A stretch of 64,000 bases of DNA from Laetmonice hystrix (lineage: Eukaryota). This document shows positions 7,786-62,476 of the stretch, piece by piece (the first letter of the stretch is position 1; every line of letters starts with the position of its first letter). The stretch covers positions 26,536,001 to 26,600,000 of the forward strand of contig OZ249437.1 in the NCBI GenBank assembly GCA_965235115.1, given 5' to 3'. Made by a program: the position numbers and the translations under genes. The notes under the pieces were generated by a model. The model had not been told where the DNA came from. It saw only the letters and a list, made by a program, of their open reading frames with translations, and did no database searches.

Positions 7786-8733
7786 TCATGGACAAATCTG
7801 AAAGAATTTGACAGCGGCTGGTTCTAGCATGGCCACAGCCAGCTGGCCGTGGTCACTGACAGCGACACTGGTCGGGTAGCGTAGGTTATCCTTGGAGGTG
7901 ACTACCTGTTTAACGAGGCGACCGTCAGTATTGAAGAGGTTGACACAATGCCGATGTTTATCGGCTATAACGATGTGACCATGTGGGTCCGTGCAAACCC
8001 CCATTGGACAAGTCAGGAGCGAGTCTCTTGAGCCGATTTTTAATAGAAACTGTCCGTTTGTATCGTAAACTTTAACGCCTCCGTTACCACTGTCAGACAC
8101 GAGGATTCGGTCGTGCTGGTCGACCGCCACATAGCGCGGCTGTTCAAAGCCGTAGGCGCCCTTACCACGGGATCCGAACTGTAGAATACAACGCCCATCC
8201 GGGTCGTGCATACTGACCGAATGACGTCCTATATCCGTCACGATATACTTCCCAAAACGTGTGACCGTCACCCCACTGGGCTGTTTAAACATGGGGTTAA
8301 ACCAACTTTTACCCCATGTTGCCACACAGGAACCCTTACTCTGAATGTCAATCATTTTAATGCACTTATCCTTAGCGTCCGTTATGGTGACGTACTCTCC
8401 GTTGATGGAGGTGACCGCCGCAGCGTCCAAGAACTGGGTGGGAGTTGGTACGACACACACCGGCTCGATTTGATTCCAGGCGATCGGTTTGACGCTGACG
8501 AAAGGTTGACGTCTGTCCTTCACCTTGCTCCACATCATGGTGTCGGTACTGAAGATCTGCAGGTTCCGGTCCACGGCATCGGCCACGATGACGCTGCCGT
8601 TACGTAAGAAGGCGATGTCTGTCGGGTAGCGCAGGTCGGGACTGGCCCCTGAACCAGGCAAGTTACTGCCGGACGATGACCGACTCCGCTTGCTCACACT
8701 CTGCGGTTTCTTGTAGCTCGACATGCTGCCAGC
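7786..8733 (-). CDS. TRIM-NHL coding exon 2 (entire NHL beta-propeller, no internal introns)
   Basis: Polypyrimidine plus cag acceptor, 315 codons plus TGA, six NHL repeats. Confidence 0.92.
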   Translation of the reverse strand, partial: AGSMSSYKKPQSVSKRSRSSSGSNLPGSGASPDLRYPTDIAFLRNGSVIVADAVDRNLQIFSTDTMMWSKVKDRRQPFVSVKPIAWNQIEPVCVVPTPTQFLDAAAVTSINGEYVTITDAKDKCIKMIDIQSKGSCVATWGKSWFNPMFKQPSGVTVTRFGKYIVTDIGRHSVSMHDPDGRCILQFGSRGKGAYGFEQPRYVAVDQHDRILVSDSGNGGVKVYDTNGQFLLKIGSRDSLLTCPMGVCTDPHGHIVIADKHRHCVNLFNTDGRLVKQVVTSKDNLRYPTSVAVSDHGQLAVAMLEPAAVKFFQICP

Positions 8734-17700: not shown

Positions 17701-17825
17701 TCGGCCATGCTGTGTGTTGCTGCACCGCGGCCACCAAAGAGCTTCCTCGAACAGATGGCAGTGAGTACATCGAGGTCCAACTCGGGCGCTGCCGCCAGCC
17801 CCTCTGCCTGCGCCGCCTCGCACAT
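7786..17825 (-). CDS. TRIM-NHL E3 ubiquitin ligase (RING-Bbox1-Bbox2-coiled coil-linker-6xNHL; TRIM2/3/71-like class without filamin domain). Two coding exons, 17825-15756 and 8733-7786, about 1005 aa
   Basis: RING CMVC..CQHTFCEHC..CPTC, B-box1 CDIC..CAQC..CPTCCDLH..HH and B-box2 CKQH..CMEC..CTVC..H..H lie in ORF 15681..17825. Six NHL-like repeats (YPTDIA, QPSGVTV, QPRYVAV, CPMGVCT, YPTSVAV) lie in ORF 7786..8724. The phase-0 donor GTGAAG|gtaaga at 15756 matches the phase-0 acceptor tctcacag|GCT at 8733. The start codon is inferred. Confidence 0.92.
10121..10771. repeat. Minisatellite, 73 bp x9, in the TRIM-NHL intron
   Basis: Unit aaactattgtagaggttcg...gaggagtataaggaaaggctaccgt. Confidence 0.97.
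11940..12078. repeat. Tandem duplication, about 72 bp x2
   Basis: gcctatatataatacaaagtcggt.tgcctgtgaaagaa.aagttatagatac...gcgtatgac occurs twice. Confidence 0.85.
12088..12281. repeat. Minisatellite, 32 bp x about 6
   Basis: Unit ctaaatataacactcatttccatca(g/c)taaaat. Confidence 0.93.
14346..14427. repeat. Tandem repeat, 27 bp x3
   Basis: Unit gtatctccggcggccatgatatggtgg. Confidence 0.95.
15756..17825 (-). CDS. TRIM-NHL coding exon 1 (RING, B-boxes, coiled coil, acidic and Pro/Ser-rich linker)
   Basis: 2070-nt open frame with zinc-ligand patterns; ends LLWEKVGSVK at a gtaaga donor. Confidence 0.92.
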
Positions 17826-19111
17826 GGCCGTTATAGTCTCATCGACTAGCAGAGGTAGTGGTGGTGTTGGGTGGTGGTGGGGCTGGGCGGGCGGGTAGGC
17901 TGACTGTTACGGCCGGGCGGGGTTGGTTGGCTGGCTGGCTGGTTGGATGGGCACGGCTCAGCGTGTATAGCCGGGCTGGCCTAGTTCACCCCCAGTCAGC
18001 TGTTACGGGGCTTCAAGTCTGACGGTGGGGGCGGCAAGGTTAGCTCCGCCCGCAGTTACCTCAGCGGGTTCATAATTATCACAATCAGTACACAAGATGT
18101 TTCAATACTCACTACAGCTGACGCTAACTGTCAATGTTAGATCTGTGTCACCAGCAGGGAGACCCAGTTGTCAGCAGTGACACACACCAGTTCACACGGT
18201 ACTGACTCGGTAACTGTCTCCCAGGTGTTGACACAGTACTACAGGTGTTCACTGTAATCCACTCACTCGTTGAGATCTCCTCTGTAACCAATCCTGACGG
18301 CAGAGATCGCTCGGCCGTGCAACCAGGCAGGATCGAACGTGACGGTCGGATAGCTTGTGGTGAAGTGAGACCGGCTAGTAAACGAATGACAGGTCTATCA
18401 GCAAATTGGGTCCTGGTCCGGCTAGGATCTGATGGCCATAGTCGAGTCACTTGACACTGATAAGTCACGTGTCCTGGTTAGTGCACCGCCGAGCCATCAC
18501 AAAGTCTGTTTATGATTATGATAGTTGTCCTGGTGATAACAGCGGGTCCACTCAAATAACGATATCCTGTGAATGAACCCAGTACACCTGTGTACACCCA
18601 CGCGCGTCCCTCCGTCCACGTGTAACAAGTCGGTGTGGTCGACCGGCCGTGTGGTGGTCGCCGATAGAGCGTGAACGTGTCCACCACCCACCCGCTCGCC
18701 GACCCGTCAACCAATGAGACTGGGTCAATAACTGCAATTAGTCACAAACCACTATCTCCTGCCCGCAGCCCAGGCAACAGGCAACACACAATGACAGCGC
18801 TAAAAACAGTTACGCTGACAATAAAAGTATCGCTGACTGCAGCCGCAGCATCGTTCTTAATGACAACTTGACTCGACGTGTAAATTTAGATGCTCGTAAT
18901 TATAATATAACCGCGGAGGATATTGTCAGTTGGTGTTGTTTGAGGATGTCAGCAACAGTCTGCGAGAAACTGGTCGGTTCGCATTCCCGTGGTCTGTCCG
19001 TCCATTCAGGCAACAGACACAAGTTGGTTTACCTGAAGGACCGACCTCTCACTGAGCCCCCTCAACCCCACAGAGCTGGCCCCTACACAGAGACCCCGGC
19101 ATAGCGTTCCG

Positions 19112-32149: not shown

Positions 32150-35100
32150 GGGGTTAGGCCAGAAAAGTTTGGGGCCCACTGATCTAAACATACCACACCA
32201 ATATGAGGCAGTGTACTGTATCTATGAGGTACATGGCTGGTTTCCGTCCAGGATTGTGTCCAGGTATGTTGCCCGGTGTGTGACGTCCCCTTTGGATGGT
32301 TTGTTTATTGAGGTACATGGATGGTTTCCGTCCAGGATTGTGTCCAGGTATGTTGCCCGGTGTGTGACGTCCCCTTTGGATGGTTTGTTTATTGAGGTAC
32401 ATGGATGGTTTCCGTCCAGGATTGTGTCCAGGTATGTTGCCCGGTGTGTGACGTCCCCTTTGGATGGTTTGTTTATTGAGGTACATGGATGGTTTCCGTC
32501 CAGGATTGTGTCCAGGTATGTTGCCCGGTGTGTGATGTCCCCTTTAGATGGTTTGTTTATTGAGGTACATGGATGGTTTCCGTCCAGGATTGAGTCCAGG
32601 TATGTTGCCCAGTGTGTGACGTCCCCTTTGGATGGTTTGTTTATTGAGGTACATGGATGGTTTCCGTCCAGGATTGTGTCCAGGTATGTTGCCCAGTGTG
32701 TGACGTCCCCTTTGGATGGTTTGTTTATTGAGGTACATGGATGGTTTCCGTCCAGGATTGTGTCCAGGTATGTTGCCCAGTGTGTGACGTCCCCTTTGGA
32801 TGGTTTGTTTATTGAGGTACATGGATGGTTTCCGTCCAGGATTGTGTCCAGGTATGTTGCCCGGTGTGTGATGTCCCCTTTGGATGGTTTGTTTATTGAG
32901 GTACATGGATGGTTTCCGTCCAGGATTGTGTCCAGGTATGTTGCCCGGTGTGTGATGACCCCTTTGGATGGTTTGTTTATTGAGGTACATGGATGGTTTC
33001 CGTCCAGGATTGTGTGGACCCAGGTATGTTATCCGGTGTGTGATGTCCCCTTTGGATGGTTTGTTTATTGAGGTACATGGATGGTTTCCGTCCAGGATTG
33101 AGTCCAGGTATGTTGCCCAGTGAGTGATGTCCTCTTTGGCTGGTTTGTTTATTGAGGTACATGGATGGTTTCCGTCCAGGATTATGTCCAGGTATGTTGC
33201 CCGGTGTGTGATGTCCCCGTTGGATGGTTTGTTTATTGAGGTACATGGATGGTTTCCGTCCAGGATTGTGTGGACCCAGGTATGTTGCCCAGTGAGTGAT
33301 GTCCTCTTTTGCTGGTTTGTTTATTGAGGTACATGGATGGTTTCCGTCCAGGATTGTGTCCAGGTATGTTGCCCAGTGAGTGATGTCCCCTTTGGATGGT
33401 TTGTTTATTGAGGTACATGGATAGTTTCCGTCCAGGATTGTGTCCAGGTATGTTGCCCGGTGTGTGATGTCCTCTTTGGATGGTTTGTTTATTGAGGTAC
33501 AAGGATGGTTTCCGTCCAGGATTGTGTCCAGGTATGTTGCCCGGTGTGTGATGTCCCCTTTAGATGGTTTGTTTATTGAGGTACATGGATGGTTTCCGTC
33601 CAGGATTGTGTCCAGGTATGTTGCCCGGTGTGTGATGTCCTCTTTGGATGGTTTGTTTATTGAGGTACAAGGATGGTTTCCGTCCAGGATTGTGTCCAGG
33701 TATGTTGCCCGGTGTGTGATGTCCCCTTTAGATGGTTTGTTTATTGAGGTACAAGGATTGTTTCCGTCCAGGATTGTGTCCAGGTATGTTGCCCGGTGAG
33801 TGATGTCCCCTTTGGATGGTTTGTTTATTGAGGTACATGGATGGTTTCCGTCCAGGATTGTGTCCAGGTATGTTGCCCGGTGTGTGATGTCCCCTTTAGA
33901 TGGTTTGTTTATTGAGGTACAAGGATTGTTTCCGTCCAGGATTGTGTCCAGGTATGTTGCCCGGTGAGTGATGTCCCCCTTGGATGGTTTGTTTATTGAG
34001 GTACATGGATGGTTTCCGTCCAGGATTGTGCCGAGGTATGTTGCCCAGTGTGTGATGTCCCCTTTGGATGGTTTGTTTATTGAGGTACATGGATGGTTTC
34101 CGTCCAGGATTGAGTCCAGGTATGTTGCCCGGTGTGTGATGTCCCCTTTGGATCGTTTGTTTATTGAGGTACATGGATGGTTTCCGTCCAGGTATGTTGC
34201 CCAGTGAGTGATGTCCTCTTTGGATCGTTTGTTTATTGAGGTACATGGATTGTGTCCAGGTATGTTGCCCAGTGAGTGATGTCCTCTTTGGATGGTTTGT
34301 TTATTGAGGTACATGGATGGTTTCCGTCCAGGTATGTTGCCCAGTGAGTGATGTCCCCTTTGGATGGTTTGTTTATTAAGGTTCATGGATGGTTTCCGTC
34401 CAGGTATGTTGTCTAGTGTCTGATGTCCCCGTTGGATGGTTTGTTTATTGAGGTACATGGATGGTTTCCGTCCAGGTATGTTGTCTAGTGTCTGATGTCC
34501 CCGTTGGATGGTTTGTTTATTGAGGTACATGGATGGTTTCCGTCCAGGTATGTTGTCTAGTGTCTGATGTCCCCTTTAGATGGTTTGTTTATTGAGGTAC
34601 ATGGATGGTTTCCGTCCAGGATTGAGTCCAGGTATGTTGCCCAGTGAGTGATGTCCTCTTTGGATCGTTTGTTTATTGAGGTACATGGATGGTTTCCGTC
34701 CAGGTATGTTGTCTAGTGCCTGATGTCCCTAGTGCCTGATGGTTTGTTTATTGAGGTACATGGATGGTTTCCGTCCAGGTATGTTGTCTAGTGCCTGATG
34801 TCCCTAGTGCCTGATGGTTTGTTTATTGAGGTACATGGATGGTTTCCGTCCAGGTATGTTGTCTAGTGCCTGATGTCCCTAGTGCCTGATGGTTTGTTTA
34901 TTGAGGTACATGGATGGTTTCCGTCCAGGTATGTTGTCTAGTGCCTGATGTCCCTAGTGCCTGATGGTTTGTTTATTGAGGTACATGGATGGTTTCCGTC
35001 CAGGTATGTTGTCTAGTGCCTGATGTCCCTAGTAGTGCCTGATGGTTTGTTTATTAAGGTACATGGATGGTTTCCGTCCAGGTATGTTGCCCAGTGCCTG

Positions 35101-38100
35101 ATGTCCCTAGTGCCTGATGGTTTGTTTATTGAGGTACATGGATGGTTTCCGTCCAGGTATGTTGTCTAGTGCCTGTTGTCTAGTGCCTGATGGTTTGTTT
35201 ATTGAGGTACATGGATGGTTTCCGGCCAGGTATGTTGTCTAGTGCCTGTTGTCTAGTGCCTGATGGTTTGTTTATTGAGGTACATGGATGGTTTCCGTCC
35301 AGGTATGTTGTCTAGTGCCTGATGTCCCTAGTGCCTGATGGTTTGTTTATTGAGGTACGTGGATGGTTTCCGTCCAGGTATGTTGTCTAGTGCCTGATGT
35401 CCCCATTGGATGGTTTGTTTATTGAGGTACATGGATGGTTTCCGTCCAGGTATGTTGTCTAGTGCCTGATGTCCCTAGTGCCTGATGGTTTGTTTATTGA
35501 CAGGTCAGTGAGGGGTTGGATTTCGCTGATAACAACGGACGAGCTGTTGTAATCACAGGTCTACCGTTCCCGCCACGAATGGACCCAAAGGTCATGCTCA
35601 AGATGCAGTTCTTGGACGAGATGAGACGCCAGGGGGGCCAGGTGAGCTAGACTTACGTACCCGGCCAGGTATGGCGGGTGTGTGTGTGTGTGTGTGGGGG
35701 GGGGGGGCAGGTGTCTTTACGGTCTGAGAACTCCAATTCATCAGTCCCTACAGAAAGCAGTTTATCTTCTGTGAGTTGGATATATGGACAGATAATCCCC
35801 AGTGAGCACGACAAATGAAAATCTGGGAAATCTTAAAACCATAAAAGTAACTGTGTTGAATTGCAGGGATTGACAGGACAGGACTGGTATAGGCAGCAGG
35901 CCACCCGAGCGGTTAACCAGGCCATTGGTCGAGTGATACGACATCGGCAAGACTATGGTGCTATCATCCTTTGTGATAACAGGTAACAGAAGATCTCTGT
36001 GTCTTGTTTAATGGAAATCTAACATTCCTGACTGGTAGGTAGAAAAAGTGATATCGCAATCGCATGTCAACTTTCCCGTTGTACTACCTATCTATCATTC
36101 ACGAATTCATGAATTCGCCGCCACTGCCATTATGATAGGCTACCAGTACTGCCCATGAAAACAGGTCTTGGTGAATTCTGATAGAGATTGCAGCAACTCT
36201 CATCACCCATCAGTACGTTAGTTTAGTGTATCGTCATAACCATAGTGAATACGTCATGTTGACTGCTTCACTTCGGTAAGTCCTCGGATGGCAGCCGAAC
36301 ATTATGGAACAGTAGGCGACTCGGGAAAGTGTTGTTCCACAAGGTGGCAGCACTGTCGCACCGGTCCTCGCTCCAACAACAGAAGACAAGATTAGATAGG
36401 ACGAGGAAATGCCAAGCTGTGTCCGAATGGGTTACAACATTTTGTGATGGAAAATTACAATGTGTAGGACTTCTCGAACTCGTAGAACCTTCAAATGTTA
36501 CTTTATTTCATAATAATTACAGCTACGGCGTCCTTGCACAGATTATCCAAATCCTATGATCCAAACCATTGCCGCCACGTGGATGTGCCTGGAATGGTCC
36601 GTCCCGCATGCGTCTTGAGTCTCCCAATAAATCATAAAGAATAAAAAAAATCAATTCCCATGTCATGCGGGCCATGAGATTGGAAATGTTGATTGCTGTT
36701 GACAGATTTGGAACGCCGACCTCGCGACAACAGCTCCCCCTGTGGGTGCGACCACAGGCCACGGTTTACGAGGCGTTCGGGAAGGCGGTCCGTGAAGTGA
36801 TGATGTTCTTCAAACAGGCCGAAAAAACAGTGGGTTTCTTAGGGAAACGTTTTACCGCTTCACCTCACCACTCGTCACCCAACTGTCCGTGTAATTTAAC
36901 CCAACCCCATTTCTTAGGGTTCCTGACACGTAATAAACCCCTCCAGTTTCTCACATGTAGACATTATTCTCCCCAGATGCCGACCCCTGGTGGTCCCAAG
37001 GTACGGGTACCTACCAGCACTGCTCGCGCCAATACTGGGGCTTACTTCATGCCTACCATCTCACGGACCTCTACAGAAAGTCTGGAGCGGGCCTCCACTG
37101 TTGCTACTCATGTCCCAAGCCTTAAACCTAAACCAGGTGAGTGGGCCTCTCAACCCTGTATACCTCTCGTTTTTTTAATTTTTGTTAATTATTTATTTTA
37201 TCCTCTTTTTTTTGGGGGGGGGGGGGGAGTTTATGACGACGTTATTTAAAGTCAGAATGTAGTTATTCCAGAGTAAATGTGATGTGGTGGTTATATTTTG
37301 AAGCTGTGATGTCTACGGAGTTATCGCTTGCCAAGATGAAAGAACAGTACAAACAGACGTGTGCGGCACCCAGTACAAGTACTGTCACAAAACGGGGACT
37401 ACTCGATGCTCTGTCTCATACCGAGGTCAGGATCAACTCTAGAGTAACTCTATCAGAGATAGTTGGCCAGCTGTTCGGTTATAATTGTGTAATCCTCGAC
37501 ATTTTCCCAGTTTGTGAGAGACTGGTATCGTTTATGGTCCAGTGCTAGGAATGCCTCTCATTGTCTGGTAGTGATTCTCTAAGTGAGATGACGGGTGTAC
37601 CAAGCAGTTACCTGTGGGTTAATCTGTTCCCTGTATGATGTTACAGGTGGCTGGTCGCAGTGGTTCTCAGACGTTCAATGACACTCAGGTCAGTGTACAT
37701 TATGTCGTCATACTGGGTGGTATCATCATGGTTACCGTTTACAGGAGGCTGTAATCTCCTTACCCGTCCAGATCATTCACAGCGGTCAGTCCGGGAGAAT
37801 TATGGGAGCCTCTGGACCGGCATGAATGGGGAATATTTCAAAAAAACGTCATCACAATGTATCTAGAAAACATGTTTTGTTGGTACTTCAGGTCCCTTCA
37901 TACCAGGCGGAACTAAAGCAGAGTCAAGCCAAACCCAAGAAGAAAATTGTTTTGAAGAAGGTATGTCAAAAGCTTTGTGCGTCTCTGAGTTCTGTTGGGA
38001 AAACCCCCTATGGATCGAAAACATGTGCTAATTGATTGGTTGTTCTGTTTGTTTTGCTTACAGTCAGATAATCAGTCGGACGTGTTCAAAGACAGGTTAC

Positions 38101-44900: not shown

Positions 44901-47900
44901 CTTCAGACTGTAAAGCTGATGCAAAGGAAAAAAACTAAGAATGTGGGAGTTCAGTTTAATACACTTTGGTTGGAGAGAAATTAAAGACGATCTGATTGCG
45001 TGAGTCTGTCGATAAATCAGGGAGACATGAGATATGCGTACACCAAGAATCCCCTTGGCCAGGTTCAAGTAGCAGAGTGAGACAGGTGAGATTTGGCCGG
45101 CCGTTATGTAAGCCGGTACATTTACTGTTAACAGTGATATCAAGTTCGTGATCGGGCCAGGTCGGAAGGTGATCTACGGCCATCGACTGCTGCTGGCGGC
45201 ACGTTCCGAAGTGTTCCGAGCAATGTTCGCTGAGACCGGCCCGAGTCAGGGGGGAAACACCCCTTCCAGCAGGGATGTGGAGGTACCGTTCGTCCTCTCT
45301 GATACCTCCCCGGAGATCTTCCTCGCCATGATGGAGTTCATCTACACAAACTGTGTCAGCCTTAACTCAAAAATTGTAAGATATAACACGGCTACTGTTC
45401 TTAACGGTGACCCAGCCAAATTTAGGATGAAATATTTAACCTGCATGACGCTTCAGATACTTCGAACAATGAGAATTCATTTTGGGGAGGAAAGGGAGTA
45501 CTGATGTCGTAAACGAACGCTCCTAAGTGGTAAATGTGTACACACACATGTACCTGTGTGTAGAAAAGGGTTGAAATGAATTATTATGAATAGTAGTTAG
45601 AAGTACTATGTAAACTCCCATCCTGAATTTTGCTGGATCACCCTTATGTCATCGTATGTTTCAAATAGAAAAATGGAGCAATTCAGGAATAACTGAAATG
45701 GAAAAATGGAGCAATTCAGGAATAACTGAGTATTCTTATGGTTAAGAACAATTAATACTGAAATTTTCAGTGACTACCTTTAATGCAAGCTCTTTAGATC
45801 ACAGGGCCAGTATTAGCTGTGGTCCTTTGTGTGCTCAAAGCAGACAAACGCTGGGTAAATGACTGAATAAATGAAGATCTCCAAATGTTGGTTCTATTTC
45901 TAGACCATTGATGTGATGGGAATGGCAATAGAGTATGGCTTAGACGGTCTCCGAATGGTAAGTTTACGATCCGCTGACCACCTCCAGGTCTGTGGATATC
46001 GGCGCCATAACACTAAAACTGTCCTGTCTGAGAAACAACGGGAAGGACTCCATAAACGGGCAGATCAGGCCCGTTTCTGCCTAGGAAATGTTACAGTCAC
46101 GAAGAGAGTATTTCGGTCAACCAAAATTATAACCAACGTGTTGGTAGTAGGGCATGATTCCTCGTTTTAATTTAGACAAAGAAATGAATTTGAAGTACAC
46201 CCACCCTTCCAATACTGATACCTTCATTCTAGCAGATCGGTTCTTATTAAAACTTGGCACCATAATGTCTGGTCTGGTATTGATACATGTAGGCCTACGA
46301 TGTTACTATTGAATTCGATGTTGGCAATTTCTACATTTCGTTAAGGAAGATATTTTCGGGTACCCTATATTTTTTCAAAATGTATAATTTGGGCGTTATT
46401 ATGTATTATAGCACTTAAAGTTAATCCACTGCATACGTTGCCCGACCCCTCCTCCCTACACCTTGAATGTGATTGTCAGTTGTGTACAGAATACATGAGA
46501 GAGAACTTGTCAGTGAACACGGCCGCTGAAACAATGCAAGCTGCTGTCACATTTGGTCAAGACGAACTACGGGACTCGGCACTCGAGTACATCGAACGAA
46601 ACACACAGGTGAGACAGGGAGACAAAGAGAGGTGGCAAAAAAAGAAACGCTTGATGTCATTTCCCATGGAGATGTGCTGCTATGGCTTTGAGCATCTAAG
46701 TTGCATAAAGATAATTCTCTGTTGACGTATAATAAAGATCTTTGCTTAAAGGAAACAACTTTATATTTTCAAAGTAACAAGAATATAATTTGTTCTCAAG
46801 CAGGGAAGGAATACTTCTGCGCCATGAGAAACTTGATGTAGTTTATGAAGCTTTATGTAGATGGATTCGTGCTATCAAATTGATACCTCCTCCTCCAGAA
46901 CGTTTTCAAGTCCAAGAGTTTCCATGAAATGTCTGAGGCGGCCTTGGCAGTCATCCTACAAAGTGATCTTCTCCGCATTGATGAGCAGGACATCCTCACG
47001 AACGTCAGGGAATGGGCAACAGTCAACTCGGTATGTAAAGTAACGAGAAGTCAGGGATTGGGTAACAGTCAACTCGATATGTCTAAATTAACCAGAAGTC
47101 AGGGAATCGGTAACAGTCAACTCGATATGTCTAAATTAACCAGAAGTCAGGGAATCGGTAACAGTCAACTCGATACTACAAGTCAGGGAATCGGTAACAG
47201 TCAACTCGATATGTCTAAAGTAATCAGAAGTCAGGGAATCGGTAACAGTCAACTCAATACTACAAGTCAGGGAATCGGTAACAGTCAACTCGATATGTCT
47301 AAAGTAACCAGAAGTCAGGGAATCGGTAACAGTCAACTCAATATGTCTAAATTAACCAGAAGTCAGGGATTTGATAACAGTCAACTCGATATGTCTAAAT
47401 TAACAAGAAGTCAGGGAATCGGTAACAGTCAACTCGATATGTCTAAAGTAACCAGAAGTCGGGGAATCGGTAACAGTCAACTCAATACTACAAGTCAGGG
47501 AATCGGTAACAGTCAACTCAATACTACAAGTCAGGGAATCGGTAACAGTCAACTCAATATGTCTAAATTAACCAGAAGTCAGGGATTTGATAACAGTCAA
47601 CTCGATATGTCTAAATTAACAAGAAGTCAGGGAATCGGTAACAGTCAACTCGATATGTCTAAAGTAACCAGAAGTCGGGGAATCGGTAACAGTCAACTCA
47701 ATACTACAAGTCAGGGAATCGGTAACAGTCAACTCAATATGTCTAAATTAACAGAAGTCAGGGATTCGATAACAGTCAACTCGATATGTCTAAAGTAATC
47801 AGAAGTCACGGAATCGGTAATAGTCAACTCGATATGTCTAAATTAACAAGAAGTCAGGGAATCGGTAACAGTCAACTCGATATGTCTAAAGTAACCAGAA

Positions 47901-50900
47901 GTCAGGGAATCGGTAACAGTCAACTCGATATGTCTAAAGTAATCAGAAGTCAGGGAATCGGTAACAGTCAACTCGATATGTCTAAAGTAATCAGAAGTCA
48001 GGGAATCGGTAACAGTCAACTCAATAAGTACTACAAGTCAGGGAATCGGTAACAGTCAACTCGATATGTCTAAAGTAACCAGAAGTCAGGGAATCGGTAA
48101 CAGTCAACTCGATATGTCTAAAGTAACCAGAAGTCAGGGAATCGGTAACAGTCAACTCGATATGTCTAAAGTAACCAGAAGTCAGGGAATCGGTAACAGT
48201 CCACTGGATATATCTAAAGTAATCAGAAGTCAGGGAATCGGTAACAGTCAACTCGATATGTCTAAAGTAATCAGAAGTCAGGGAATCAGTAACAGTCAAC
48301 TCGATATGTCTAAAGTAATCAGAAGTCAGGGAATCAGTAACAGTCAACTCGATATGTCTAAATTAACAAGAAGTCAGGGAATCGGTAACAGTCAACTAAA
48401 GTAACCAGAAGTCAGGGAATCGGTAACAGTCAACTCGATATGTCTAAATTAACCAGAAGTCGGGGAATCGGTAACAGTCAACTCAATACTACAAGTCAGG
48501 GAATCGGTAACAGTCAACTCGATTATGTCTAAACTAACAAGAAGTCAGGGAATCGGTAACAGTCAACTCGATAGATCTAAACTAACAAGAAGTCAGGGAA
48601 TCGGTAACAGTCAACTCGATATGTCTAAATTAACAAGAAGTCAGGGAATGGGAAACCATCAACTCGATATATTGGGTAATAGAGTAGTATAGTGTTAATG
48701 GAAGTGGATATTACATGCAGATATACGAGTTTTGATCCTTAAAAAATGATTTTCCAACATATTGTTCATTACGACCACAAGGTTGCGTTCTATGGTTATT
48801 GATATTCAAGACAGGGAAGGGTTTACAGTTATAATCATAGCATTCCCAAGCCGAAGCTTGGGTAGACTTTAATGCCTGTCCCTGGGTGCTGATCTATTAC
48901 ATTCATATACAGTGTTGCATCTTTGGCTTGTCTGTGGTAGTCCTAGCAGTGGCAGCAGTTTATCTCCACTTGCAAGTGATATATTGAAGTCCTGGGAATT
49001 GGGGCTTGAAAGAGGGCCATAATGTGTGTGCCATAAAGATGAGGAGAGACAGAAGCGGCGTGACTGTTGGGTTGTTTATTAGATAACCATGTTGTTGTAT
49101 ACACCCATAGACACCCATAATGAGTAGGATCATTGGGTTGCAGTGACAGAGTAGTGATAGCGATTGGTAACAAAGATAACTTCCGAACGATGTACAATCT
49201 GTTACGTGCGGTAAGCCCTACAGTACCCGGCTATGGCCGCCGTACGGTTACCCGTCAAATAAATCACATCATTTTGGTATGTATGTGCTTCTGGTGTGGC
49301 GCATACAATACTAATTTTTAATCTTTAATGTGTCCAAACGATGTATCCATTTTCTAATTTACTGACTTTTTTATTCCTTTTATTTATACAAGAAAAGCAC
49401 AGATGCCAGTGTTTTTCTTTCGCTCTTTGCTCTTTCTTTCTTGCTTTCTTTCAATACTCTTTCTTTCTTTCTTTCTTTCTTTCTTTTGTTGTTGGACACA
49501 GAGGACGTCAAAGTGAAACTACTTTCTGTCACTGCAAGAAGGACTCTAGATGTCCCCAGCACTGTTATCTACCATGTATACCTGGTGCATGAGATGGTGC
49601 TATTGATTTCTCTAGTTATATTAAAGGTAATATCCCACCGGTGGTATTGACCGAAATCTTCAGTTTCCTGCTTACCTGCTCACCACTGACGTACTTTATG
49701 GCACTGATTGTTTATCATATTGATTCTATTAACACACACTACGAGTAGACAGCTGTGAAATTCTCCCTAATGGCAGAAAAATGAAAAACTAGCGACAGTG
49801 TCCGCAAAGTGCGATGAATCCGCCATTTTGGCCCCCTTTGGCTGCCGGGAATCCTTTGAACGGGTCCCATGATCACGTGACTCTCGCTCTGATTACTCGA
49901 GATCAATCTCCCATAATGCAGAGGGGCTCGCTCCACTACCCATCTGCCACACCTGGCTTTTTACGGGCAAAATCGGACCCTACGCGTTTAACCCTGTTTT
50001 TTGCAAAGTCGGCCGCCCTTTATGGTATCTATAATATTTAACGTAGATCTACCTCTAAATCTCAAAACCGAGATTATAACAAGTGGCATTCACCGACATT
50101 TCGGGATGATTCGAAACACTTCGGGTGTTTCCGACTTGGTACTCCGTTCAACATTGCGGCTGCAGGTGATTTCTCCGAAGATTTAGATGTTTGTGTGGCA
50201 TCATATTCTGACAGTCTGCGCCGTAAAAGTAAACAACAAACGGCAGTACCCAGCCTGTGACAGAGATTAAATGAAGTGAACGATCTCTGTCCGGAGAGTG
50301 TACTCGAGATGTAAGCACGCGCCATTGCCGATCGTGTGAAAAGTGTGAAAACACAGCCGGCTGCAAATCCCGGGGTCTCGGAATAAATGTGTCATTTTCA
50401 GTGACCGCATTCAGAATTGGCGATTTTCTTTCACAAAATTCTTTTAAAAAGCTACATAAACAGGTAGGGGACCTTTGGGGCATATCGGAGAACCGCAATA
50501 CAGACATATTTTTGCTGAAACACGACGTATTATTTGAAATTCGTGCTACTTTCACTTTCCCTCACTATATTAGGTTGTGATTGGACTGAAAGCACGGGAG
50601 GTGGCCAGGACTGTGATCGGTCACGTGTGCCTCCCCAGCACTGTTATCTATCATGTATACCTCGTGCATGAGATGGTGCTATTGAATGTTTCCAGTTATA
50701 TTAATTACTTTCCCTCACTATATTAGGTTGTGATTGGACTAAAAGCACGGGAGGTGGCCAGGACTGTGATCGGTCATGTGTGCCTCCCCAGCACTGTTAT
50801 CTATCATGTATACCTCGTGCATGAGATGGTGCTATTGAATGTTTCCAGTTATATTAATTACTTTCCCTCACTATATTAGGTTGTGATTGGACTGAAAGCA

Positions 50901-53900
50901 CGGGAGGTGGCCAGTACTGTGATCGGTCATGTGTGCCTCCCCAGCACTGTTATCTATCATGTATACCTCGTGCATGAGATGGTGCTATTGAATGTTTCCA
51001 GTTATATTAATTACTTTCCCTCACTATATTAGGTTGTGATTGGACTAAAAGCACGGGAGGTGGCCAGGACTGTGATCGGTCATGTGTGCCTCCCCAGCAC
51101 TGTTATCTATCATGTATACCTCGTGCATGAGATGGTGCTATTGAATGTTTCCAGTTATATTAATTACTTTCCCTCACTATATTAGGTTGTGATTGGACTA
51201 AAAGCACGGGAGGTGGCCAGCACTGTGATCGGTCATGTGCGCCTGCCACTGCTCTCACCAGAGGAACTCAAGGACGTAGAGGAGGAGAACGCCAAGGATG
51301 GACTTATTCCCGTGAGTGCACCTGTATATCAATAATATACTTGAAATAACCATTTTACTTCAAGTCGTCATTTACAAGTCTCTCCCAACACAAGTCACTC
51401 GTGTCAATACCATAAGTAGGGGCAGGGTGCCACTGGATTCTAAAGGTTCTATACAAAAAGTTAGAACAGTTATTATATCAAGAACGATTAATTGTCTGAC
51501 TCTTTTGTTACGTGCAAAGGCATATTAGTATAGCGTCGGCCAGGAAAAAATATTGCAGCGGAAAATGGTTGTGGTTGATTTAAGGGCAGACGCTTTATAG
51601 TCGCATCAATATCTCGCCCATCATACTTAACTGTTATCTTCTAAATGTCTGAAAACTCAATAAAAAGTAATAAAAGTCGATTACATTGCCGCATTATAAC
51701 CGATTTTCATAATTAGTATGTCCCTGTCCGTCCAAAGCCGGGCCCTGTCGGCTTGTGTCTTTACTTGTGGAAGGACCTAAACGGCCGTAAACGAAGCTAG
51801 AGAAAAAAAAGAATCGGTAGGCCTACTCATTAGTGCCTATATTAATTTTTTGGTGCAAGATGTTGATCGAGCCCTTTTCGGACCTGCTTCAATCTTGATA
51901 AGATAGAATTAAATGGCCAAAAAACAGGAACCCATATCTTTTAAAAAAACTAATCAGTTACGGAGTATAGTGCATGTATAGTGGTCTGGGTCTTAAGAGA
52001 TGATGACACACTAACAGAAGCATCGTATTAAAAGGTTAAAATGACTTTACACGTTTCCTAACAGCAGAGTTACCGCTCCTCGGGTAGTCAGTGATGGTCT
52101 CTCCGAGTTAATTTGAAAGTACTTATAAGATGATCAAATTTCAAGTTTCACGCTAATCTTTTAATATTCACAAACCCCTTCTACTATCAGTGATTAATAT
52201 TCGCCTTCTATAATACTGGAGCTCATTCTGGTTGTATATTGGGTTTATGATAGGAATTAAAGATCACCATGGCAATACTGGAGCACATTCTGGTTGTATA
52301 TTGGGTTTATGATAGGAATTAAAGATCAACATGGCAATACTGGAGCTCATTCTGGTTGTATATTGGGTTTATGATAGGAATTAAAGATCACCATTGCAAT
52401 ACTGGAGCTCATTCTGGTTGTATATTGGGTTTATGATAGGAATTAAAGATCACCATGGCAATACTGGAGCACATTCTGGTTGTATATTGGGTTTATGATA
52501 GGAATTAAAGACCACGGCAATACTGGAGCTCATTCTGGTTGTATATTGGGTTTATGATAGGAATAAGATCACCATGGCAATACTGGAGCTCATTCTGGTT
52601 GTATATTGGGTTTATGATAGGAATAAGATCACCATGGCAATACTGGAGCTCATTCTGGTTGTATATTGGGTTTATGATAGGAATTAAAGACCACGGCAAT
52701 ACTGGAGCTCATTCTGGTTGTATATTGGGTTTATGATAGGAATTAAAGATCACCATTGCAATACTGGAGCACATTCTGGTTGTATATTGGGTTTATGATA
52801 GGAATTAAAGATCACCATGGCAATACTGGAGCTCATTCTGGTTGTATATTGGGTTTATGATAGGAATTTAAGACCATGGCAATACTGGAGCTCATTCTGG
52901 TTGTGTATATTGGGTTTATGATAGGAATTAAAGATCACCATGGTCCTGTATAGCCACGCCGGAAGGACCTGTCAGAATTGCCGGCCCTGACCATGAGTAC
53001 GTAGATGAGGTCTAAACCCTCCCTGACTCTATGAAATAAATCAGAAGGCATCCTTTTGTAAATAGCTGCATCCTTAGAGGGGGGAGGGCGGGACTTTTCT
53101 AATGGTGTGTCTTCCCTCATAACGTGGATCTTTATGAGGCAATTAGTGATTGCCGTATTGTCGCGTTATGACAGGGGCCACAAGTAGGCCTTGGCGACCC
53201 GCCTCCCACACGCGGCCAGTCAGCGCTGCTAACATATTGAGTAATGTACGTATAACCAGCCAACTTGTTCCCACTGAATGGGTATTGTTACGTGATCACC
53301 GAGCCAAACATACACATTCTGGGAACCGATGGAATTACATGAGATAAGAGCATATTAACATGTAAAAAAATGCAACGGATGGGAGAAAAAAGGTGTCATC
53401 ATCAGACTCACAGAGAGCGTTCAATTGTTTATGTCACCAAAACTCTTTGTCCCCGCCGCTGTGGAAAGATAAATTAAGCAATCTTTAAGACAGATTGACC
53501 TGATTTGTTTGGATTATCCCCCTTTGACCTATATTTAGGACTTTTGCTTTTCTTCTACGAGACAGGCTAATCAATTCGTTTCAGAATGCCAGGTAATGTA
53601 AGGAATTTAAATAACCGACTAGTTTTTTACCGACCTGATTTCCCGGAGATCTGGGAAAATGTGATCACTGTGCATAAAATAATCCCGATTAGTAGATTAC
53701 TCTCCAATTTGTTCTTGTCTTTATCCGGCATCCCTTTCTATCTTTATTGCTTTGAAAAATATGCTGAAAACAAAGTGAAGAAATCAAACAGTTTAATTTA
53801 TCAGCCAAATGGCTCCTGAAGTGATAGATATTAATAGAAAGTTAAACTCAGACCCAGCTATTTGTGCTGATGCGGAGATATTGTGTCAGATTAAATGTTA

Positions 53901-59900: not shown

Positions 59901-62476
59901 GTTGGCTGGTGGTGGCGGCCGTGTCAGTTGAACGGGCGGACGAGGAACCGTATAGGAGGGCCCATGTGGATTGGGCGGTCTCCATCGCCGGCTCCATGCC
60001 CCCGACATGTAGGTACCCGCCCTGCCGCCTGGCCGGCCGGTCACACTGGGCGTGGTCGGCCGGCCACTGCGAGGTCTATAGTCAGCATCTGATGTGAAAA
60101 GGATAAAGTGACAAAACCTCTTGTACTTATGTCGGTAGAATTCAATAAAATTTCATACAGTATGTATACGCCATTTTACTAATCATATTTGTTTGAATAA
60201 ACAATTCCACATTCCTGAAAGGTTTCCGTTCAGCGCGAATAACCCATGGTACCATTCCAAGGAAATCTGAGTTAGGGGATAGGGATTAGGATAACATTGA
60301 GGGGAAGGGATACGGATTAGGATAACGTTGCAAGAGAAGGCTAAGGATTAGGATGACATTGAGGGAGAAGGCTAGGGATTAGGATGACATTGAGGGAGAG
60401 GACTACGGATTAGGATAACATTGAGTGGCAGGGATAGGGATTAGGATAACATTGAGGGGCAGGGATAGGGATTAGGATAACATTGAGGGGCAGGGATAAG
60501 GATTAGGATACCATTGCAGGAGAAGGCTAGGGATTAGGATGACATTGAGGGGTAGGGATAGGGATTAGGATGACATTGAAAGAGAGGGCTAGGGATTAGG
60601 ATAACATTGAGGGGCAGGGATAGGGATTAGGATAACATTGAGTGGCAGGGATAGGGATTAGGATAACATTGAGTGGCAGGGATAGGGAGAAGGATAACAT
60701 TGAGGGGTAGGGATAGGGATTAGGATGACATTGAAAGAGAGGGCTAGGGATTAGGATAACATTGAGGGGCAGGGATAGGGATTAGGATAACATTGAGGGG
60801 CAGGGATAGGGATTAGGATAACATTGAGTGGCAGGGATAGGGATTAGGATAACATTGAGGGGCAGGGATAAGGGGATAAGGATTAGGATACCATTGCAGG
60901 AGAAGGCTAGGGATTAGGATGATATTGAGGGGCAGGGATAGGGATTAGGATGACATTGAGGGGCAGGGATAGGGATTAGGATACCATTGCAGGAGAAGCC
61001 TAGGGATTAGGATAAGATTGCGGGAGAAGGCTAGGGATTAGGATGACATTGAGGGGAAGGGATAGGGATTAGGATGACATTGAGGGGCAGGGATAGGGAT
61101 TAGGGTAACATTGAGGGGAAGGGATAGGGATTAGGATGACGTTGAGGGGAAGGGATAGGGATTAGGATGACACTGAGGGAGAAGGCTAGGATTACGATGA
61201 CATTTTTCAGATGCAGGGACAGGATGGGGATAACATTTTGTGGAGGTCTGGCGACCGGAAGTAGGAGCTTACATTAGGTTTGAGGCTACAAATTCAAAGA
61301 GATCATTTTTTTAGTTCTTACCGCCAACTTTCTCGGAGATGCTACAATGCGGCACGTACCGTTCGGCGTCTTAGTGTGGAGAAACGTTTAATTCGCACTT
61401 AACCCAAATTAATGTCGTTAACGTAAAGTGTCATCTATATCCGGTATGTAGACCCAGTGAGAAACCATTCTAAGGAAGTGATCTAAAGGAGTAAATAATT
61501 TGTCTTCGCTCATTACTGCTATGACTGTATCTATGGAAGGGTAAAATATTGATAGGCCCTAATACGGTATTCGTACAAGGGTTTCAACAAGGGATCACGA
61601 TTTGATGTCCAATTGACGTTCTGCCCTTTGATTGGCGTTTGTTGTCGTTTTTATAACCTACTGACATTTGATGCAGATGTTTTTTGATATTTGTTTTTCC
61701 ACAACGATATGTGTTATTGAAGTTTAACGGTTCTTGAATAGAAATGTTAACTGACTCAACTGAGACAGTTCATTTTTTTATGAACCGGATAGTGCTCTTG
61801 TTTGAATAGTCAGTCACACCGCCGTATTAAGATTTAATTTACTTATTATTAATAGAAAATTTCCCATGAAACTGGTCGTACGGATTAAGGTTATAGGGCA
61901 GAGGTATTTCTGGGAGGCCTGTGGACCCAGGCGAAGGTTAAGGATTAGGGTTATGGCCTCAAAATAACACTGATAGATTACTTTGTCTTCCTAACAAAAT
62001 TTATAGAGATAAAATTATTGCCATACAGGTTGCGTTTCTCATCTATCGTTATCCTGTCGTGCGTTAAAATCCCCATTGAAAATGCATTGGAGTTAACGAT
62101 ACGACAAGTTAACGACATGATGAGAAACGTCCCCAAATGTATATCATTCCCACTCAATGCTTTGGGAAGCCAGTTTGTATGATGAGTAAATAGGGTAGAT
62201 AGACCTGTCACCCTCATGTTATGCCTCATTCAAGACTTTAGGTGCACCTTCCTATACCAAAAATATAATAAACCAACTCATCATACACCACAGACGAATC
62301 TTTTATTTCCTTTTGCTAATGTACACACCATGTTTTCTTCCCTGACCTAGGTTGACCTGATTGCCTTCGCGTGGAAGTGTCATGCACTGAAGGCTGGTGT
62401 AAAAGACAACGCGCTGACGACTAAACGGAAAGGAACAGTGGCCCGCGACTGTCACAAGAATATGCAACTTTCATAA
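41886..62476 (+). CDS. BTBD19: BTB/POZ-BACK domain protein, BTBD19-like. Seven coding exons: 41886-41971, 45135-45375, 45904-45957, 46480-46608, 46899-47030, 51186-51311, 62351-62476; 297 aa
   Basis: Spliced peptide: ...FASDMKKWVNNKDLSDIKFVIG..YGHRLLLAARSEVFRAMF..EFIYTN..AIEYGLDGLR..QAAVTFG..SDLLRIDE..VRLPLLSPEEL..LIP|VDLIAFAWKCHAL..KRKGT. It matches recalled human BTBD19 (VNNPRYSDV, AVEYGL, AVTFG, EAWKCHAL, RRGT), including 18-, 44- and 42-codon exons. All introns are GT-AG. Confidence 0.9.
42483..43243. mobile_element. Possible TTAA-flanked (Kolobok-like) non-autonomous element
   Basis: TTAA|AGGT...ACCT|TTAA ends; the TIR match beyond 4 bp is weak. Confidence 0.3.
43380..43545 (+). mobile_element. 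Decayed LINE (CR1/L2-like) reverse transcriptase C-terminal fragment
   Basis: Frame-broken KWQQHFN...EK/DLG...VIIDQRLSW resembles the W..FN..KC...EKDLGV.ID..L.W motif. Confidence 0.35.
45135..45375 (+). CDS. BTBD19: BTBD19-like exon 2 (BTB domain)
   Basis: ttaacag acceptor, ATT|gtaaga donor; BTB motifs HRLLLAARSEVFRAMF and FIYT. Confidence 0.93.
45904..45957 (+). CDS. BTBD19: BTBD19-like exon 3 (TIDVMGMAIEYGLDGLRM)
   Basis: tttctag acceptor, ATG|gtaagt donor. Confidence 0.9.
46480..46608 (+). CDS. BTBD19: BTBD19-like exon 4 (LCTEY...ERNTQ)
   Basis: ttgtcag acceptor, CAG|gtgaga donor. Confidence 0.9.
46899..47030 (+). CDS. BTBD19: BTBD19-like exon 5 (BACK domain; NVFKSKSF...EWATVNS)
   Basis: cctccag acceptor, TCG|gtatgt donor. 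Confidence 0.9.
47017..48665. repeat. Minisatellite, 48-bp units plus 30-bp variants (about 35-38 copies), starting at a BTBD19 exon/intron junction
   Basis: Unit aacagtcaactcgatatgtctaaa(g/t)taaccagaagtcagggaatcggt. Confidence 0.98.
49625..50550. mobile_element. Insertion of about 925 bp (TTAA-target, Kolobok-like ends) interrupting the first unit of the 153-bp array
   Basis: The left flank ends gttatattaa and the right flank resumes ttca-ctttccctcactatattag; joined, they rebuild the array unit. Confidence 0.55.
50555..51243 (+). repeat. 153 bp x5 tandem array containing the BTBD19 exon-6 acceptor and the exon's 5' end
   Basis: ctttccctcactatattag|gttgtgattggact recurs with exon starts at 50574, 50727, 50880, 51033 and 51186. 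Confidence 0.97.
51186..51311 (+). CDS. BTBD19: BTBD19-like exon 6 (VVIGLKAREVASTVIGHVRLPLLSPEELKDVEEENAKDGLIP)
   Basis: tattag acceptor (the last of five tandem copies), CCC|gtgagt donor. Confidence 0.88.
52213..52938. repeat. Minisatellite, about 62 bp x12
   Basis: Unit atactggagctcattctggttgtatattgggtttatgataggaattaaagatcaccatggca. Confidence 0.97.
54225..54705. mobile_element. Harbinger/Tourist-like MITE remnants rich in CCGAT/ATCGG motifs
   Basis: gtgtgacaccggct occurs twice; ggcctgtccacac ... gtgtgaacg are imperfect ends. Confidence 0.35.
56500..57500 (-). mobile_element. Decayed LINE (CR1/L2-like) 3' portion
   Basis: Minus-strand frames give RDFEVLLHPILAL, then TFVQP..VRSETWSP..RSVQ, then RHSH..L..C. 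This order resembles KDLGV / LVRP.LEY..VWSP..VQ / TRGH. Many stops and frameshifts. Confidence 0.45.
57594..57690. mobile_element. Short palindromic MITE-like hairpin
   Basis: aggaccgc..cgcaaaacgtaaaaatt / aatttttacgttttgcg..gcggtcct. Confidence 0.75.
58915..59089. mobile_element. hAT-like MITE (CAGG...CCTG ends)
   Basis: caggcccgtaatt ... aattacggccctg TIRs (1 mismatch); internal G/C runs; no clean 8-bp TSD. Confidence 0.6.
59440..59544 (+). pseudogene. Diverged copy of the BTBD19 stop-codon region and proximal 3' UTR inside the last intron
   Basis: aagaatat..tcataaactgtgaatt..acggaag.tgg.tgtccac.ttcctt.ggtttcctgagat..ctcagaaatctct matches 62456-62550. Confidence 0.7.
60272..61238. repeat. 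G-rich minisatellite, 31 bp x about 31
   Basis: Unit gggatagggattaggataacattgaggggca with variants. Confidence 0.96.
62351..62476 (+). CDS. BTBD19: BTBD19-like last exon (VDLIAFAWKCHALKAGVKDNALTTKRKGTVARDCHKNMQLS*)
   Basis: ccctgacctag acceptor; AWKCHAL motif; TAA stop. Confidence 0.9.
   Translation, partial: VDLIAFAWKCHALKAGVKDNALTTKRKGTVARDCHKNMQLS

What the first reader, a model, noticed from the sequence alone, without database searches (positions are those of the whole stretch)
50555..51311. Five tandem 3' splice sites, four of them leading to an in-frame stop (built-in poison acceptors)
Each 153-bp unit is a complete acceptor (ctttccctcactatattag) plus the first ~57 nt of BTBD19 exon 6 plus intron tail. 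153 nt is exactly 51 codons. Splicing to any of the first four acceptors (50574, 50727, 50880, 51033) therefore reads VVIGLKAREVARTVIGHVCLPSTVIYHVYLVHEMVLLNVSSYINYFPSLY*. The stop is the TAG of the next acceptor. Only the most distal site (51186) gives full-length protein, although scanning models favour the first AG. Copy number could therefore act as a dial for productive mRNA versus NMD or truncated protein.
Basis: partly seen in the sequence, partly recalled or inferred. Interest (0 to 1): 0.8.

Follow-up and report, generated by a model that had tools for sequence, protein, structure and literature searches.

The report
Tandem decoy splice acceptors ("mirage" minisatellite)
A 153-base piece covering the end of an intron and the start of a BTBD19 exon has been copied five times head to tail, giving four extra identical splice acceptors; this is a known kind of repeat ("mirage" minisatellite) that does not disturb splicing where it has been tested, and no RNA data exist to test it here.

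Summary
Window 50554-51247 is a 153-bp tandem array (4.5 copies, 98% identical) covering the 3' splice site and first 62 nt of the sixth coding exon of a BTBD19 orthologue. Acceptors sit at 50574, 50727, 50880, 51033 and 51186. Splicing from donor 47030 to any of the first four reads 50 codons, then the next acceptor's TAG. Only 51186 gives a protein colinear with BTBD19 of other animals.

New here:
- The array is really five full units. Unit 1 was split by a ~930-bp MITE inserted at a TTAA, so the duplication is old and tolerated.
- The decoys have lost an invariant arginine that the real exon keeps.
- Contigs built from raw reads confirm a multi-copy array.

The "poison acceptor dial" idea is untested, because no RNA run exists for this organism. 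The in-frame stop follows automatically from a TAG acceptor in a phase-0 intron.

The structure matches the "mirage" minisatellites of amphioxus genes and mirrors the human F7 intron-7 VNTR, where decoy sites stay silent.

The scan's first-stage notes list 23 similar arrays in this genome. I checked three others: two in this window and one 11 Mb away. I rate it a new member of a known kind, of modest interest.

The parts
46899..47030 (+). BTBD19 coding exon 5 (BACK domain, ends ...REWATVNS, phase 0); donor GT at 47031-47032
   Evidence: Pfam BACK E=2.8e-5; colinear with homologues; sequence read directly
47004..48670 (+). 48-bp x ~36 minisatellite grown from the last 27 nt of exon 5 plus its donor (a 5' 'mirage'). 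Only the real copy has GT; at least 21 copies read AT at the donor.
   Evidence: TRF; BLAST of the exon end plus donor; motif count
49553..49624 (+). X segment (intron tail) of the first repeat unit, now separated from its acceptor; 92% identical to X in the array; ends at the TTAA target of the MITE
49625..50553 (+). MITE insertion (terminal inverted repeat starting AGGTAATAT, TTAA target). The family is about 525 bp and has more than 1600 candidate copies. This copy carries a nested ~397-bp insert at 49904-50300 and a small deletion at its right end.
   Evidence: k-mer depth 200-2900x that of unique sequence
50554..51247 (+). 153-bp tandem array, 4.5 units. Each unit is 20 nt of polypyrimidine tract plus AG, then exon nt 1-62, then the 72-nt X intron tail.
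50574..50726 (+). decoy reading frame 1: acceptor AG at 50572-73, 50 codons, TAG at 50724-26
50727..50879 (+). decoy reading frame 2 (identical to decoy 4), TAG at 50877-79
50880..51032 (+). decoy reading frame 3, TAG at 51030-32
51033..51185 (+). decoy reading frame 4, TAG at 51183-85 (this TAG is the real acceptor)
51186..51311 (+). real BTBD19 exon 6 (42 codons, carries the ...VRLPLLSPEEL... BACK motif); donor GT at 51312
   Evidence: Pfam BACK; colinear alignment without a gap; two heterozygous SNPs, both synonymous
45135..45375 (+). BTB-domain exon of the same gene; further exons at 45904-45957 and 46480-46608
   Evidence: Pfam BTB E=2e-13; tblastn with homologues; splice dinucleotides
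62351..62476 (+). last coding exon of BTBD19 (...FAWKCHALK...TTKRKGT..., stop TAA)

Best explanation
This is a 'mirage' minisatellite. A 153-bp segment straddling the intron 5 / exon 6 boundary of a BTBD19 orthologue was duplicated in tandem, with short C-rich similarity at the join. The segment holds 72 nt of intron tail, the polypyrimidine tract and AG, and exon nt 1-62. It was amplified to five units and kept uniform by unequal exchange.

The last unit runs on into the intact exon and is the functional 3' splice site. The four upstream copies are decoys.

Shown:
- the anatomy;
- the uniqueness of the unit in the genome;
- a MITE later inserted into unit 1, which makes the array old;
- loss of coding constraint in the decoys.

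Inferred: the decoys are mostly or wholly ignored by the spliceosome. Only the last acceptor is paired with the complete exon and with a 5' splice site 126 nt downstream (exon definition). Rare use of a decoy would give a transcript with a premature stop, expected to be degraded. On this reading the array is a tolerated by-product of a genome rich in minisatellites, not a regulatory device.
For: Array and identical acceptors.

Gene identity and productive acceptor:
- Pfam BTB and BACK domains.
- 120 or more BTBD19 homologues.
- The exon pieces tile the family alignment with no gap at ...VNS|VV....
- The spliced model is 61.5% identical to Lingula BTBD19 over 265 aa.

Origin and age:
- The unit is unique in the genome.
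- The solo X at 49553-49624 ends exactly at the TTAA where a MITE begins. Unit homology resumes right after the MITE's end, and eight other copies of the MITE define the same termini.
- The MITE copy is only 87-94% identical to its relatives, and solo X is 92% identical to array X. The duplication is therefore not recent.

No coding constraint on the decoys: all four carry C>T at +55, which turns the Arg of the RLxLL motif, present in all five homologues aligned, into Cys. The real exon keeps Arg, and its two heterozygous SNPs (51251, 51254) are synonymous.

The edge pieces diverge while the inner units are 98.7-100% identical. The same pattern is described for the amphioxus globin mirage (PMC3087553).

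Precedent:
- The amphioxus BflGb6 mirage has 150-160-bp units made of the intron's 3' end plus the exon's 5' part, with 3 or 6 copies per haplotype. RT-PCR shows regular splicing (PMC3087553).
- The pseudo-donors of the F7 VNTR are functional but silent (PMC1557585).

Recurrence in this genome.
Against: - There are no RNA data, so silence of the decoys rests on analogy and on exon-definition reasoning.
- Acceptors 2-5 are identical from -134 to +35, including any branch point, so nothing in the site itself favours the last one.
- Using acceptor 4 would give a 279-nt exon, which is still within the size range that is normally recognised.
- The decoy AGs are intact in every copy, whereas the decoy donors of the 5' array in the same intron are all mutated. 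That could mean decoy acceptors matter less, or that they are kept for a reason.
- The mirage precedent comes from cephalochordates, while this genome groups with spiralians.
Confidence: 0.65

Rival explanations
1. Poison-acceptor dial. The decoy acceptors compete effectively, so a sizeable share of transcripts ends at the in-frame TAG and is lost to NMD or gives a truncated BTB-only protein. Array copy number would then set BTBD19 output.
For: The sites are identical over -134..+35. An in-frame TAG follows each decoy. Each stop lies 125-585 nt upstream of the last exon junction, so it would qualify for junction-dependent NMD. The decoy AGs are intact after a long time.
Against: There is no transcript evidence. 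The stop follows automatically from a TAG acceptor in a phase-0 intron. The amphioxus mirages and the F7 VNTR show silent decoys (PMC3087553, PMC3902484, PMC1557585). The decoys lack a downstream donor. No copy-number difference between haplotypes could be resolved.
Confidence: 0.15
2. Harmless ratchet. Each unit starts with GT and ends with AG. A transcript spliced to a decoy could be re-spliced unit by unit, using the regenerated site TCG|GTTGTG, until the real exon is reached (recursive splicing).
For: The exon begins with GT directly after the AG, so every 153-nt unit has GT...AG ends. First-stage notes describe similar 'mini-intron chains' elsewhere in the genome (unchecked).
Against: The regenerated donor matches the MAG|GTRAGT consensus at only 3 of 9 positions. 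No donor-like site scoring 7/9 or more exists in the array apart from the real one at 51312.
Confidence: 0.05
3. Assembly artefact: the true locus holds one copy, or many fewer copies, and the array was inflated during assembly.
For: Units 2 and 4 are 100% identical. The short-read contigs cannot span the array.
Against: The read-derived contigs carry the duplication-specific exon-to-X junction. One 183-nt contig spans more than one unit. Three variants of +36 are seen, more than two alleles can give. Array contigs run at 2-3x the flanking depth. Total k-mer mass equals about 4.5 units in run X1 and about 3.5 in X2.
Confidence: 0.03

Closest known systems
Amphioxus 'mirage' minisatellites (Adh3, TnC, globins BflGb6/BflGb9, PGBD5)
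   Same: Both are tandem arrays whose unit spans an intron/exon boundary and so multiplies splice signals. BflGb6 is the closest match: 150-160-bp units made of the intron's 3' end plus the 5' part of the exon, 3-6 copies, inner units homogenised, edge units divergent, and the authentic copy last (PMC3087553). Both ends of an intron can be affected, as here.
   Different: Mirages have been described only in cephalochordates. This gene tree places the host among spiralians (modest support). Splicing was checked by RT-PCR in amphioxus and could not be checked here. In this array one unit is split by a MITE.
Human F7 intron 7 37-bp VNTR
   Same: It is a natural minisatellite whose first unit contains the exon/intron junction. 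Five to nine identical pseudo-sites are functional when tested, yet only the site next to the exon is used (PMC1557585).
   Different: It concerns 5' splice sites, with the decoys downstream of the real site. Here the sites are 3' splice sites and the decoys lie upstream. The 5' array of this same intron (47004-48670) is the closer analogue, but its decoy donors are mutated.
Experimental tandem duplications of splice sites (globin constructs cited in PMC1557585; also Reed and Maniatis 1986, from my own knowledge)
   Same: Identical duplicated 3' splice sites compete in cis. The outcome depends on proximity and on the amount of exon sequence attached.
   Different: Those are artificial two-copy constructs and gave conflicting results. 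This is a natural five-copy array that has existed for a long time.
Rogers' model of intron gain by tandem duplication across an AG|GT site
   Same: The units are bounded by AG|GT, so a duplicated unit has GT...AG ends. The globin paper proposes mirages as raw material for new introns (PMC3087553).
   Different: Nothing indicates that a new intron or exon has formed here. The GT side is a very poor donor.
NAGNAG tandem acceptors, and regulated poison exons (AS-NMD)
   Same: Both involve several acceptors for one exon, where some choices give a premature stop.
   Different: NAGNAG sites are 3 nt apart and share one branch point, whereas these are 153 nt apart. Regulated poison exons are defined by conserved, documented use, which is not shown here.

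Membership tests
Mirage minisatellite (tandem duplication of an intron/exon boundary) | Head-to-tail array of units of tens to about 160 bp | tested here: met
   153 bp x 4.5 copies, or 5.0 counting the split first unit; 98% matches
Mirage minisatellite (tandem duplication of an intron/exon boundary) | The unit contains a real intron/exon junction with its splice signal | tested here: met
   Each unit holds the polypyrimidine tract, the AG and exon nt 1-62. The exon is confirmed by homology.
Mirage minisatellite (tandem duplication of an intron/exon boundary) | The authentic copy lies at the edge of the array and runs on into the intact exon | tested here: met
   Only unit 5 continues past +62 into ...RLPLLSPEEL... 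and the donor at 51312
Mirage minisatellite (tandem duplication of an intron/exon boundary) | Concerted evolution of inner units, with edge units left out | tested here: met
   Units 1-4 are 98.7-100% identical. The real exon part is 92-95% identical to the decoy copies, and solo X is 92% identical to array X.
Mirage minisatellite (tandem duplication of an intron/exon boundary) | Normal mRNA is produced despite the duplicated sites | not testable with these tools
   No RNA run is available for the organism
Mirage minisatellite (tandem duplication of an intron/exon boundary) | Length polymorphism or instability between haplotypes | tested here: inconclusive
   The k-mer contigs cannot resolve copy number per haplotype. 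Mass estimates were 4.5, 3.5 and lower in three runs of one sample.
Regulated unproductive splicing (poison exon or acceptor with NMD) | Documented use of the stop-introducing splice choice | not testable with these tools
   no transcripts or same-species proteins found
Regulated unproductive splicing (poison exon or acceptor with NMD) | The stop-introducing choice would create a premature stop upstream of the last exon junction | tested here: met
   TAG at 50724, 50877, 51030 and 51183; the last junction is at 51311/62351
Recursive splice site | Acceptor followed immediately by a consensus donor (YnAG|GTRAGT) | tested here: not met
   The sequence is TAG|GTTGTG. Only the GT matches, and the regenerated TCG|GTTGTG scores 3/9.
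NAGNAG tandem acceptor | Two AGs 3 nt apart sharing one branch point and tract | tested here: not met
   The spacing is 153 nt and each copy has its own tract
BTBD19 (BTB plus BACK protein of about 290 aa) | BTB and BACK domains, about 290 aa, colinear with named BTBD19 proteins | tested here: met
   Pfam PF00651 and PF07707; named BTBD19 hits; 61.5% identity over 265 aa to Lingula BTBD19. The N-terminal exon was not settled.

The most novel reading that the evidence does not exclude
Splice-junction-anchored minisatellites may be a genome-wide trait of this apparently spiralian genome. They may arise, or survive, preferentially at exon boundaries. That would point to a junction-linked duplication process, and some arrays with intact decoys, such as this one, may measurably lower productive mRNA in proportion to copy number. 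The genome would then offer dozens of natural experiments on choice among identical 3' and 5' splice sites, outside the cephalochordates where 'mirages' were described anecdotally.
Probability: 0.15. Interest if true: 0.65.

Novelty: new member of a known kind. Interest (0 to 1): 0.35.

Why it matters
Five acceptors that are identical over about 170 nt form a clean natural test of how a spliceosome picks among equal 3' splice sites. They are the 3' counterpart of the human F7 VNTR model.

Such arrays have also been proposed as raw material for new introns and exons. How mirages arise is still unknown (PMC3087553). A genome in which they recur, and which lies outside the lancelets, would make that question testable.

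For BTBD19 itself the most likely consequence is none.

Tried and rejected
- **RNA evidence.** Two searches for sequencing runs found only three DNA-like runs of one sample and no RNA run. Acceptor usage could therefore not be measured.
- **Same-species transcripts or annotated isoforms.** I searched 5.8 billion proteins with a profile that included the window's own exons. The best full-length match was 61.5% identical, so no same-species model exists there.
- **Naming the organism.** A 741-aa TRIM ORF, a cluster look-up, a contig look-up and the protein atlas all gave unnamed relatives only. A BTBD19 tree puts the gene among non-mollusc spiralians with modest support.
- **Unit derived from a dispersed repeat.** Rejected: the unit is unique in the genome. 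Only the 5' flank is a MITE.
- **Template-switch origin with X as filler DNA.** Rejected in favour of a simple tandem duplication followed by a MITE insertion, because the break in homology coincides with both MITE termini.
- **Decoys masked by RNA structure.** The decoy unit folds better than shuffled sequence (z -2.55) and the real exon does not (z +0.43). However, the tract and AG stay unpaired in the predicted fold, so masking is not supported.
- **Internal donors that would turn decoys into cassette exons.** None scores 7/9 or better.
- **Special meaning of 153 = 51 codons.** Rejected: the chance is one in three, and any other length would also give a premature stop.
Full report

Yes. Tandem Repeats Finder reports a 153-bp period, 4.5 copies, 98% matches and no indels at 50554-51244. 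A BLAST of one unit against the window gives copies starting at 50555, 50708, 50861 and 51014 (98.7-100% identical; units 2 and 4 are identical). A fifth, partial copy at 51167-51247 runs on into unique exon sequence.

All five acceptors share the same 20 nt of pyrimidine-rich tract ending in TAG. Acceptors 2-5 are identical from -134 to +35, apart from one G/A difference at +15.

Translating 50574-51311 shows four 50-codon frames, each closed by the TAG that is the next acceptor, followed by the open 42-codon exon.

**2. Which gene, and which acceptor is the real one?**

- The neighbouring open frames carry a BTB domain (E 2e-13) and BACK-domain pieces.
- A search of 1.8 billion representatives, followed by a profile search, returned about 290-aa proteins that their sources name BTB/POZ domain-containing protein 19.
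- tblastn and a multiple alignment place the window's exons at 45135-45375, 45904-45957, 46480-46608, 46899-47030, 51186-51311 and 62351-62476. All have AG/GT borders and, from the second on, phase 0.
- Exon 5 ends ...WATVNS at 47030. The exon starting at 51186 continues exactly where the homologues continue, without a gap.
- The spliced model is 61.5% identical to Lingula BTBD19 over 265 residues.

The N-terminal exon was not settled; a candidate lies at about 44943-45001.

**3. Is it an assembly artefact?**

Only three runs of one sample hold the locus, as Logan contigs. Laid on 50000-51800 they show the following:

- an error-free contig across the duplication-specific join between exon nt 62 and the intron tail (50751-50834);
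- a 183-nt contig longer than one unit;
- three versions of position +36 (G, T, C), more than two alleles of a single copy could give;
- array contigs at 2-3 times the flanking depth;
- summed k-mer mass over the array equal to about 4.5 units per haplotype in run X1 and about 3.5 in X2.

The sample is probably the assembled individual, so this checks the assembly but is not a population sample.

The same contigs show two heterozygous SNPs in the real exon (51251 G>T, 51254 C>G). Both fall on third codon positions and are synonymous.

**4. How the array arose**

The unit is unique in the 627-Mb genome. The only other match is a 72-nt copy of its intron-tail part ('X') at 49553-49624, 92% identical.

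The stretch between that solo X and the array is a dispersed repeat with more than 1600 candidate copies. Comparison with eight other copies shows a roughly 525-bp element with inverted ends (TTAAAGGTAATAT ... ATATTACCTTTAA). Here it spans about 49621-50553 and carries a nested ~397-bp insert at 49904-50300.

- Its left junction reads flank, TTAA, then the element's end. This is exactly what insertion into the TTAA of the unit's ...TATATTAATTAC... would give.
- On the right, unit homology resumes at the element's end after a small deletion.

The array is therefore five full units of X + acceptor + exon(1-62), and a MITE later split unit 1 about 22 nt upstream of its AG.

A simple tandem duplication explains the structure. 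Its join (...GCCTCC|CCAGCACTG...) shows a few bases of similarity between exon +58..+62 and the start of X.

Three figures indicate that the first duplication is old, while the inner units are still being homogenised or were amplified recently:

- the MITE copy is only 87-94% identical to its relatives;
- solo X differs from array X by 8%;
- the decoy exon parts differ from the real exon by 5-8%.

A state with several acceptors has thus been tolerated for a long time.

**5. Are the decoys under coding constraint?**

No. All four carry T instead of C at +55. This turns the arginine of the RLxLL motif, which is present in all five BTBD19 homologues aligned, into cysteine. The real exon keeps arginine. 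This fits decoys that do not contribute to protein.

**6. Would the decoys be used?**

This cannot be measured, because no RNA run exists and no same-species protein model is in the databases. What the sequence says:

- The sites themselves cannot explain a preference, since they are identical.
- Only the last one is followed by the rest of the exon and by a donor (CCC|GTGAGT at 51312) 126 nt away.
- No donor-like site of 7/9 or better lies inside the array. A decoy-defined exon would therefore be 279, 432, 585 or 738 nt long.

Under exon definition the last site should win. Acceptor 4 (279 nt) is the likeliest to leak.

A predicted fold of the decoy unit is more stable than shuffles (z -2.55), unlike the real exon (z +0.43). 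It leaves the tract and AG unpaired, so it gives no support for masking.

Recursive re-splicing of the GT...AG units is unlikely, because the regenerated donor TCG|GTTGTG matches the consensus at 3 of 9 positions.

The in-frame stop is no evidence of design. With a phase-0 intron and a TAG acceptor, the TAG is always in frame with the exon. The unit length being a multiple of three has a one-in-three chance, and any other length would also end in a premature stop.

**7. Comparison with what is known**

[quoted passage not shown] They occur in 3 or 6 copies depending on haplotype and show concerted evolution that leaves out the edge units. RT-PCR indicates regular splicing (PMC3087553, section 16).
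- The human F7 gene has a 37-bp VNTR whose first unit holds the exon 7 donor. Its five to nine pseudo-donors are functional in constructs but silent in vivo (PMC1557585).

It does not apply to complete sites 153 nt apart.

**8. Recurrence in this genome**

- The 5' end of the same intron carries a 48-bp x ~36 array grown from the last 27 nt of exon 5 plus the donor. Only the real copy has GT; at least 21 copies read AT.
- The 3.3-kb array at 32225-35503 ends exactly at the acceptor of an RTEL1-type helicase exon (...[23 protein letters not shown]...), and its unit repeats the tract and AG.
- Eleven megabases away, a 37-bp x 25 array starts in the last 24 nt of a DHFR-like exon (...GIGFKNTLPWPSLR) and repeats an intact CAG|GTAGGC donor.

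The scan's first-stage notes list 23 such observations in this genome. I checked only those named above.

About 18% of the window is minisatellite, so some overlap with junctions is expected. In BTBD19, 2 of 5 arrays span a junction against roughly 7% expected (P about 0.04). That is suggestive only.

A BTBD19 tree recovers vertebrates, tunicates, ambulacrarians and molluscs. It places the window's protein with annelid, brachiopod and bryozoan sequences, outside molluscs (support 89/88). The host is therefore probably a spiralian, not a lancelet, although no lancelet sequence was in the tree.

**9. Verdict**

The locus is a new member of a known kind, the mirage minisatellite.

The poison-acceptor dial remains an untested idea that precedent makes unlikely. 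The more interesting open point is the apparent genome-wide recurrence outside cephalochordates.

Noticed in passing
window 47004-48670: A 48-bp x ~36 minisatellite derived from the last 27 nt of BTBD19 exon 5 plus its donor. The real donor is the only copy with GT; at least 21 copies have AT. The reading frame stays open for about 300 codons through the array.
   Followed up: partly
window 32225-35503 and exon 35504-35641: A 3.3-kb array (75/84-bp units) ends exactly at the acceptor of an RTEL1-type helicase C-terminal exon. The unit repeats the polypyrimidine tract and an AG|GT.
   Followed up: partly
L017:2939-3949 (G000:C2:15530938-15531948): A DHFR-like exon (...GIGFKNTLPWPSLR) whose last 24 nt plus an intact CAG|GTAGGC donor are repeated about 25 times (37-bp unit). 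A 24-bp x 110 array follows at L017:4229-6982.
   Followed up: partly
window 49621-50553: A MITE family of about 525 bp with a TTAA target and inverted ends TTAAAGGTAATAT.../...ATATTACCTTTAA. The genome holds more than 1600 candidate copies in two end-variants. This copy carries a nested ~397-bp repeat at 49904-50300.
   Followed up: partly
window 1-64000: About 19 separate minisatellite arrays cover roughly 11.7 kb (18%) of the window, with periods of 20-153 bp and mostly 90-100% unit identity.
   Followed up: no
window 51255-51800: The read contigs differ from the assembly at 8-11 positions in 546 nt of intron 6. That is about 2% heterozygosity or haplotype difference in the sequenced individual.
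   Followed up: no
window 50708-50857: The decoy unit is predicted to fold into a closed domain (-47 kcal/mol, z -2.55) in which exon nt +3..+12 pair with the end of the intron tail. The real exon shows no such excess (z +0.43).
   Followed up: no
window 15684-17906 (minus strand) and 7789-8760 (minus strand): A 741-codon single-exon RING/B-box ORF and a 324-codon ORF further along the minus strand, together read as a TRIM-NHL gene. The closest relatives are unnamed proteins of 48-71% identity from unannotated assemblies.
   Followed up: partly
window 52212-52943 and 60276-61204: Two further arrays lie inside the 11-kb intron 6 of BTBD19 (62 bp x 12 and 31 bp x 30). Neither touches a splice junction.
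   Followed up: no
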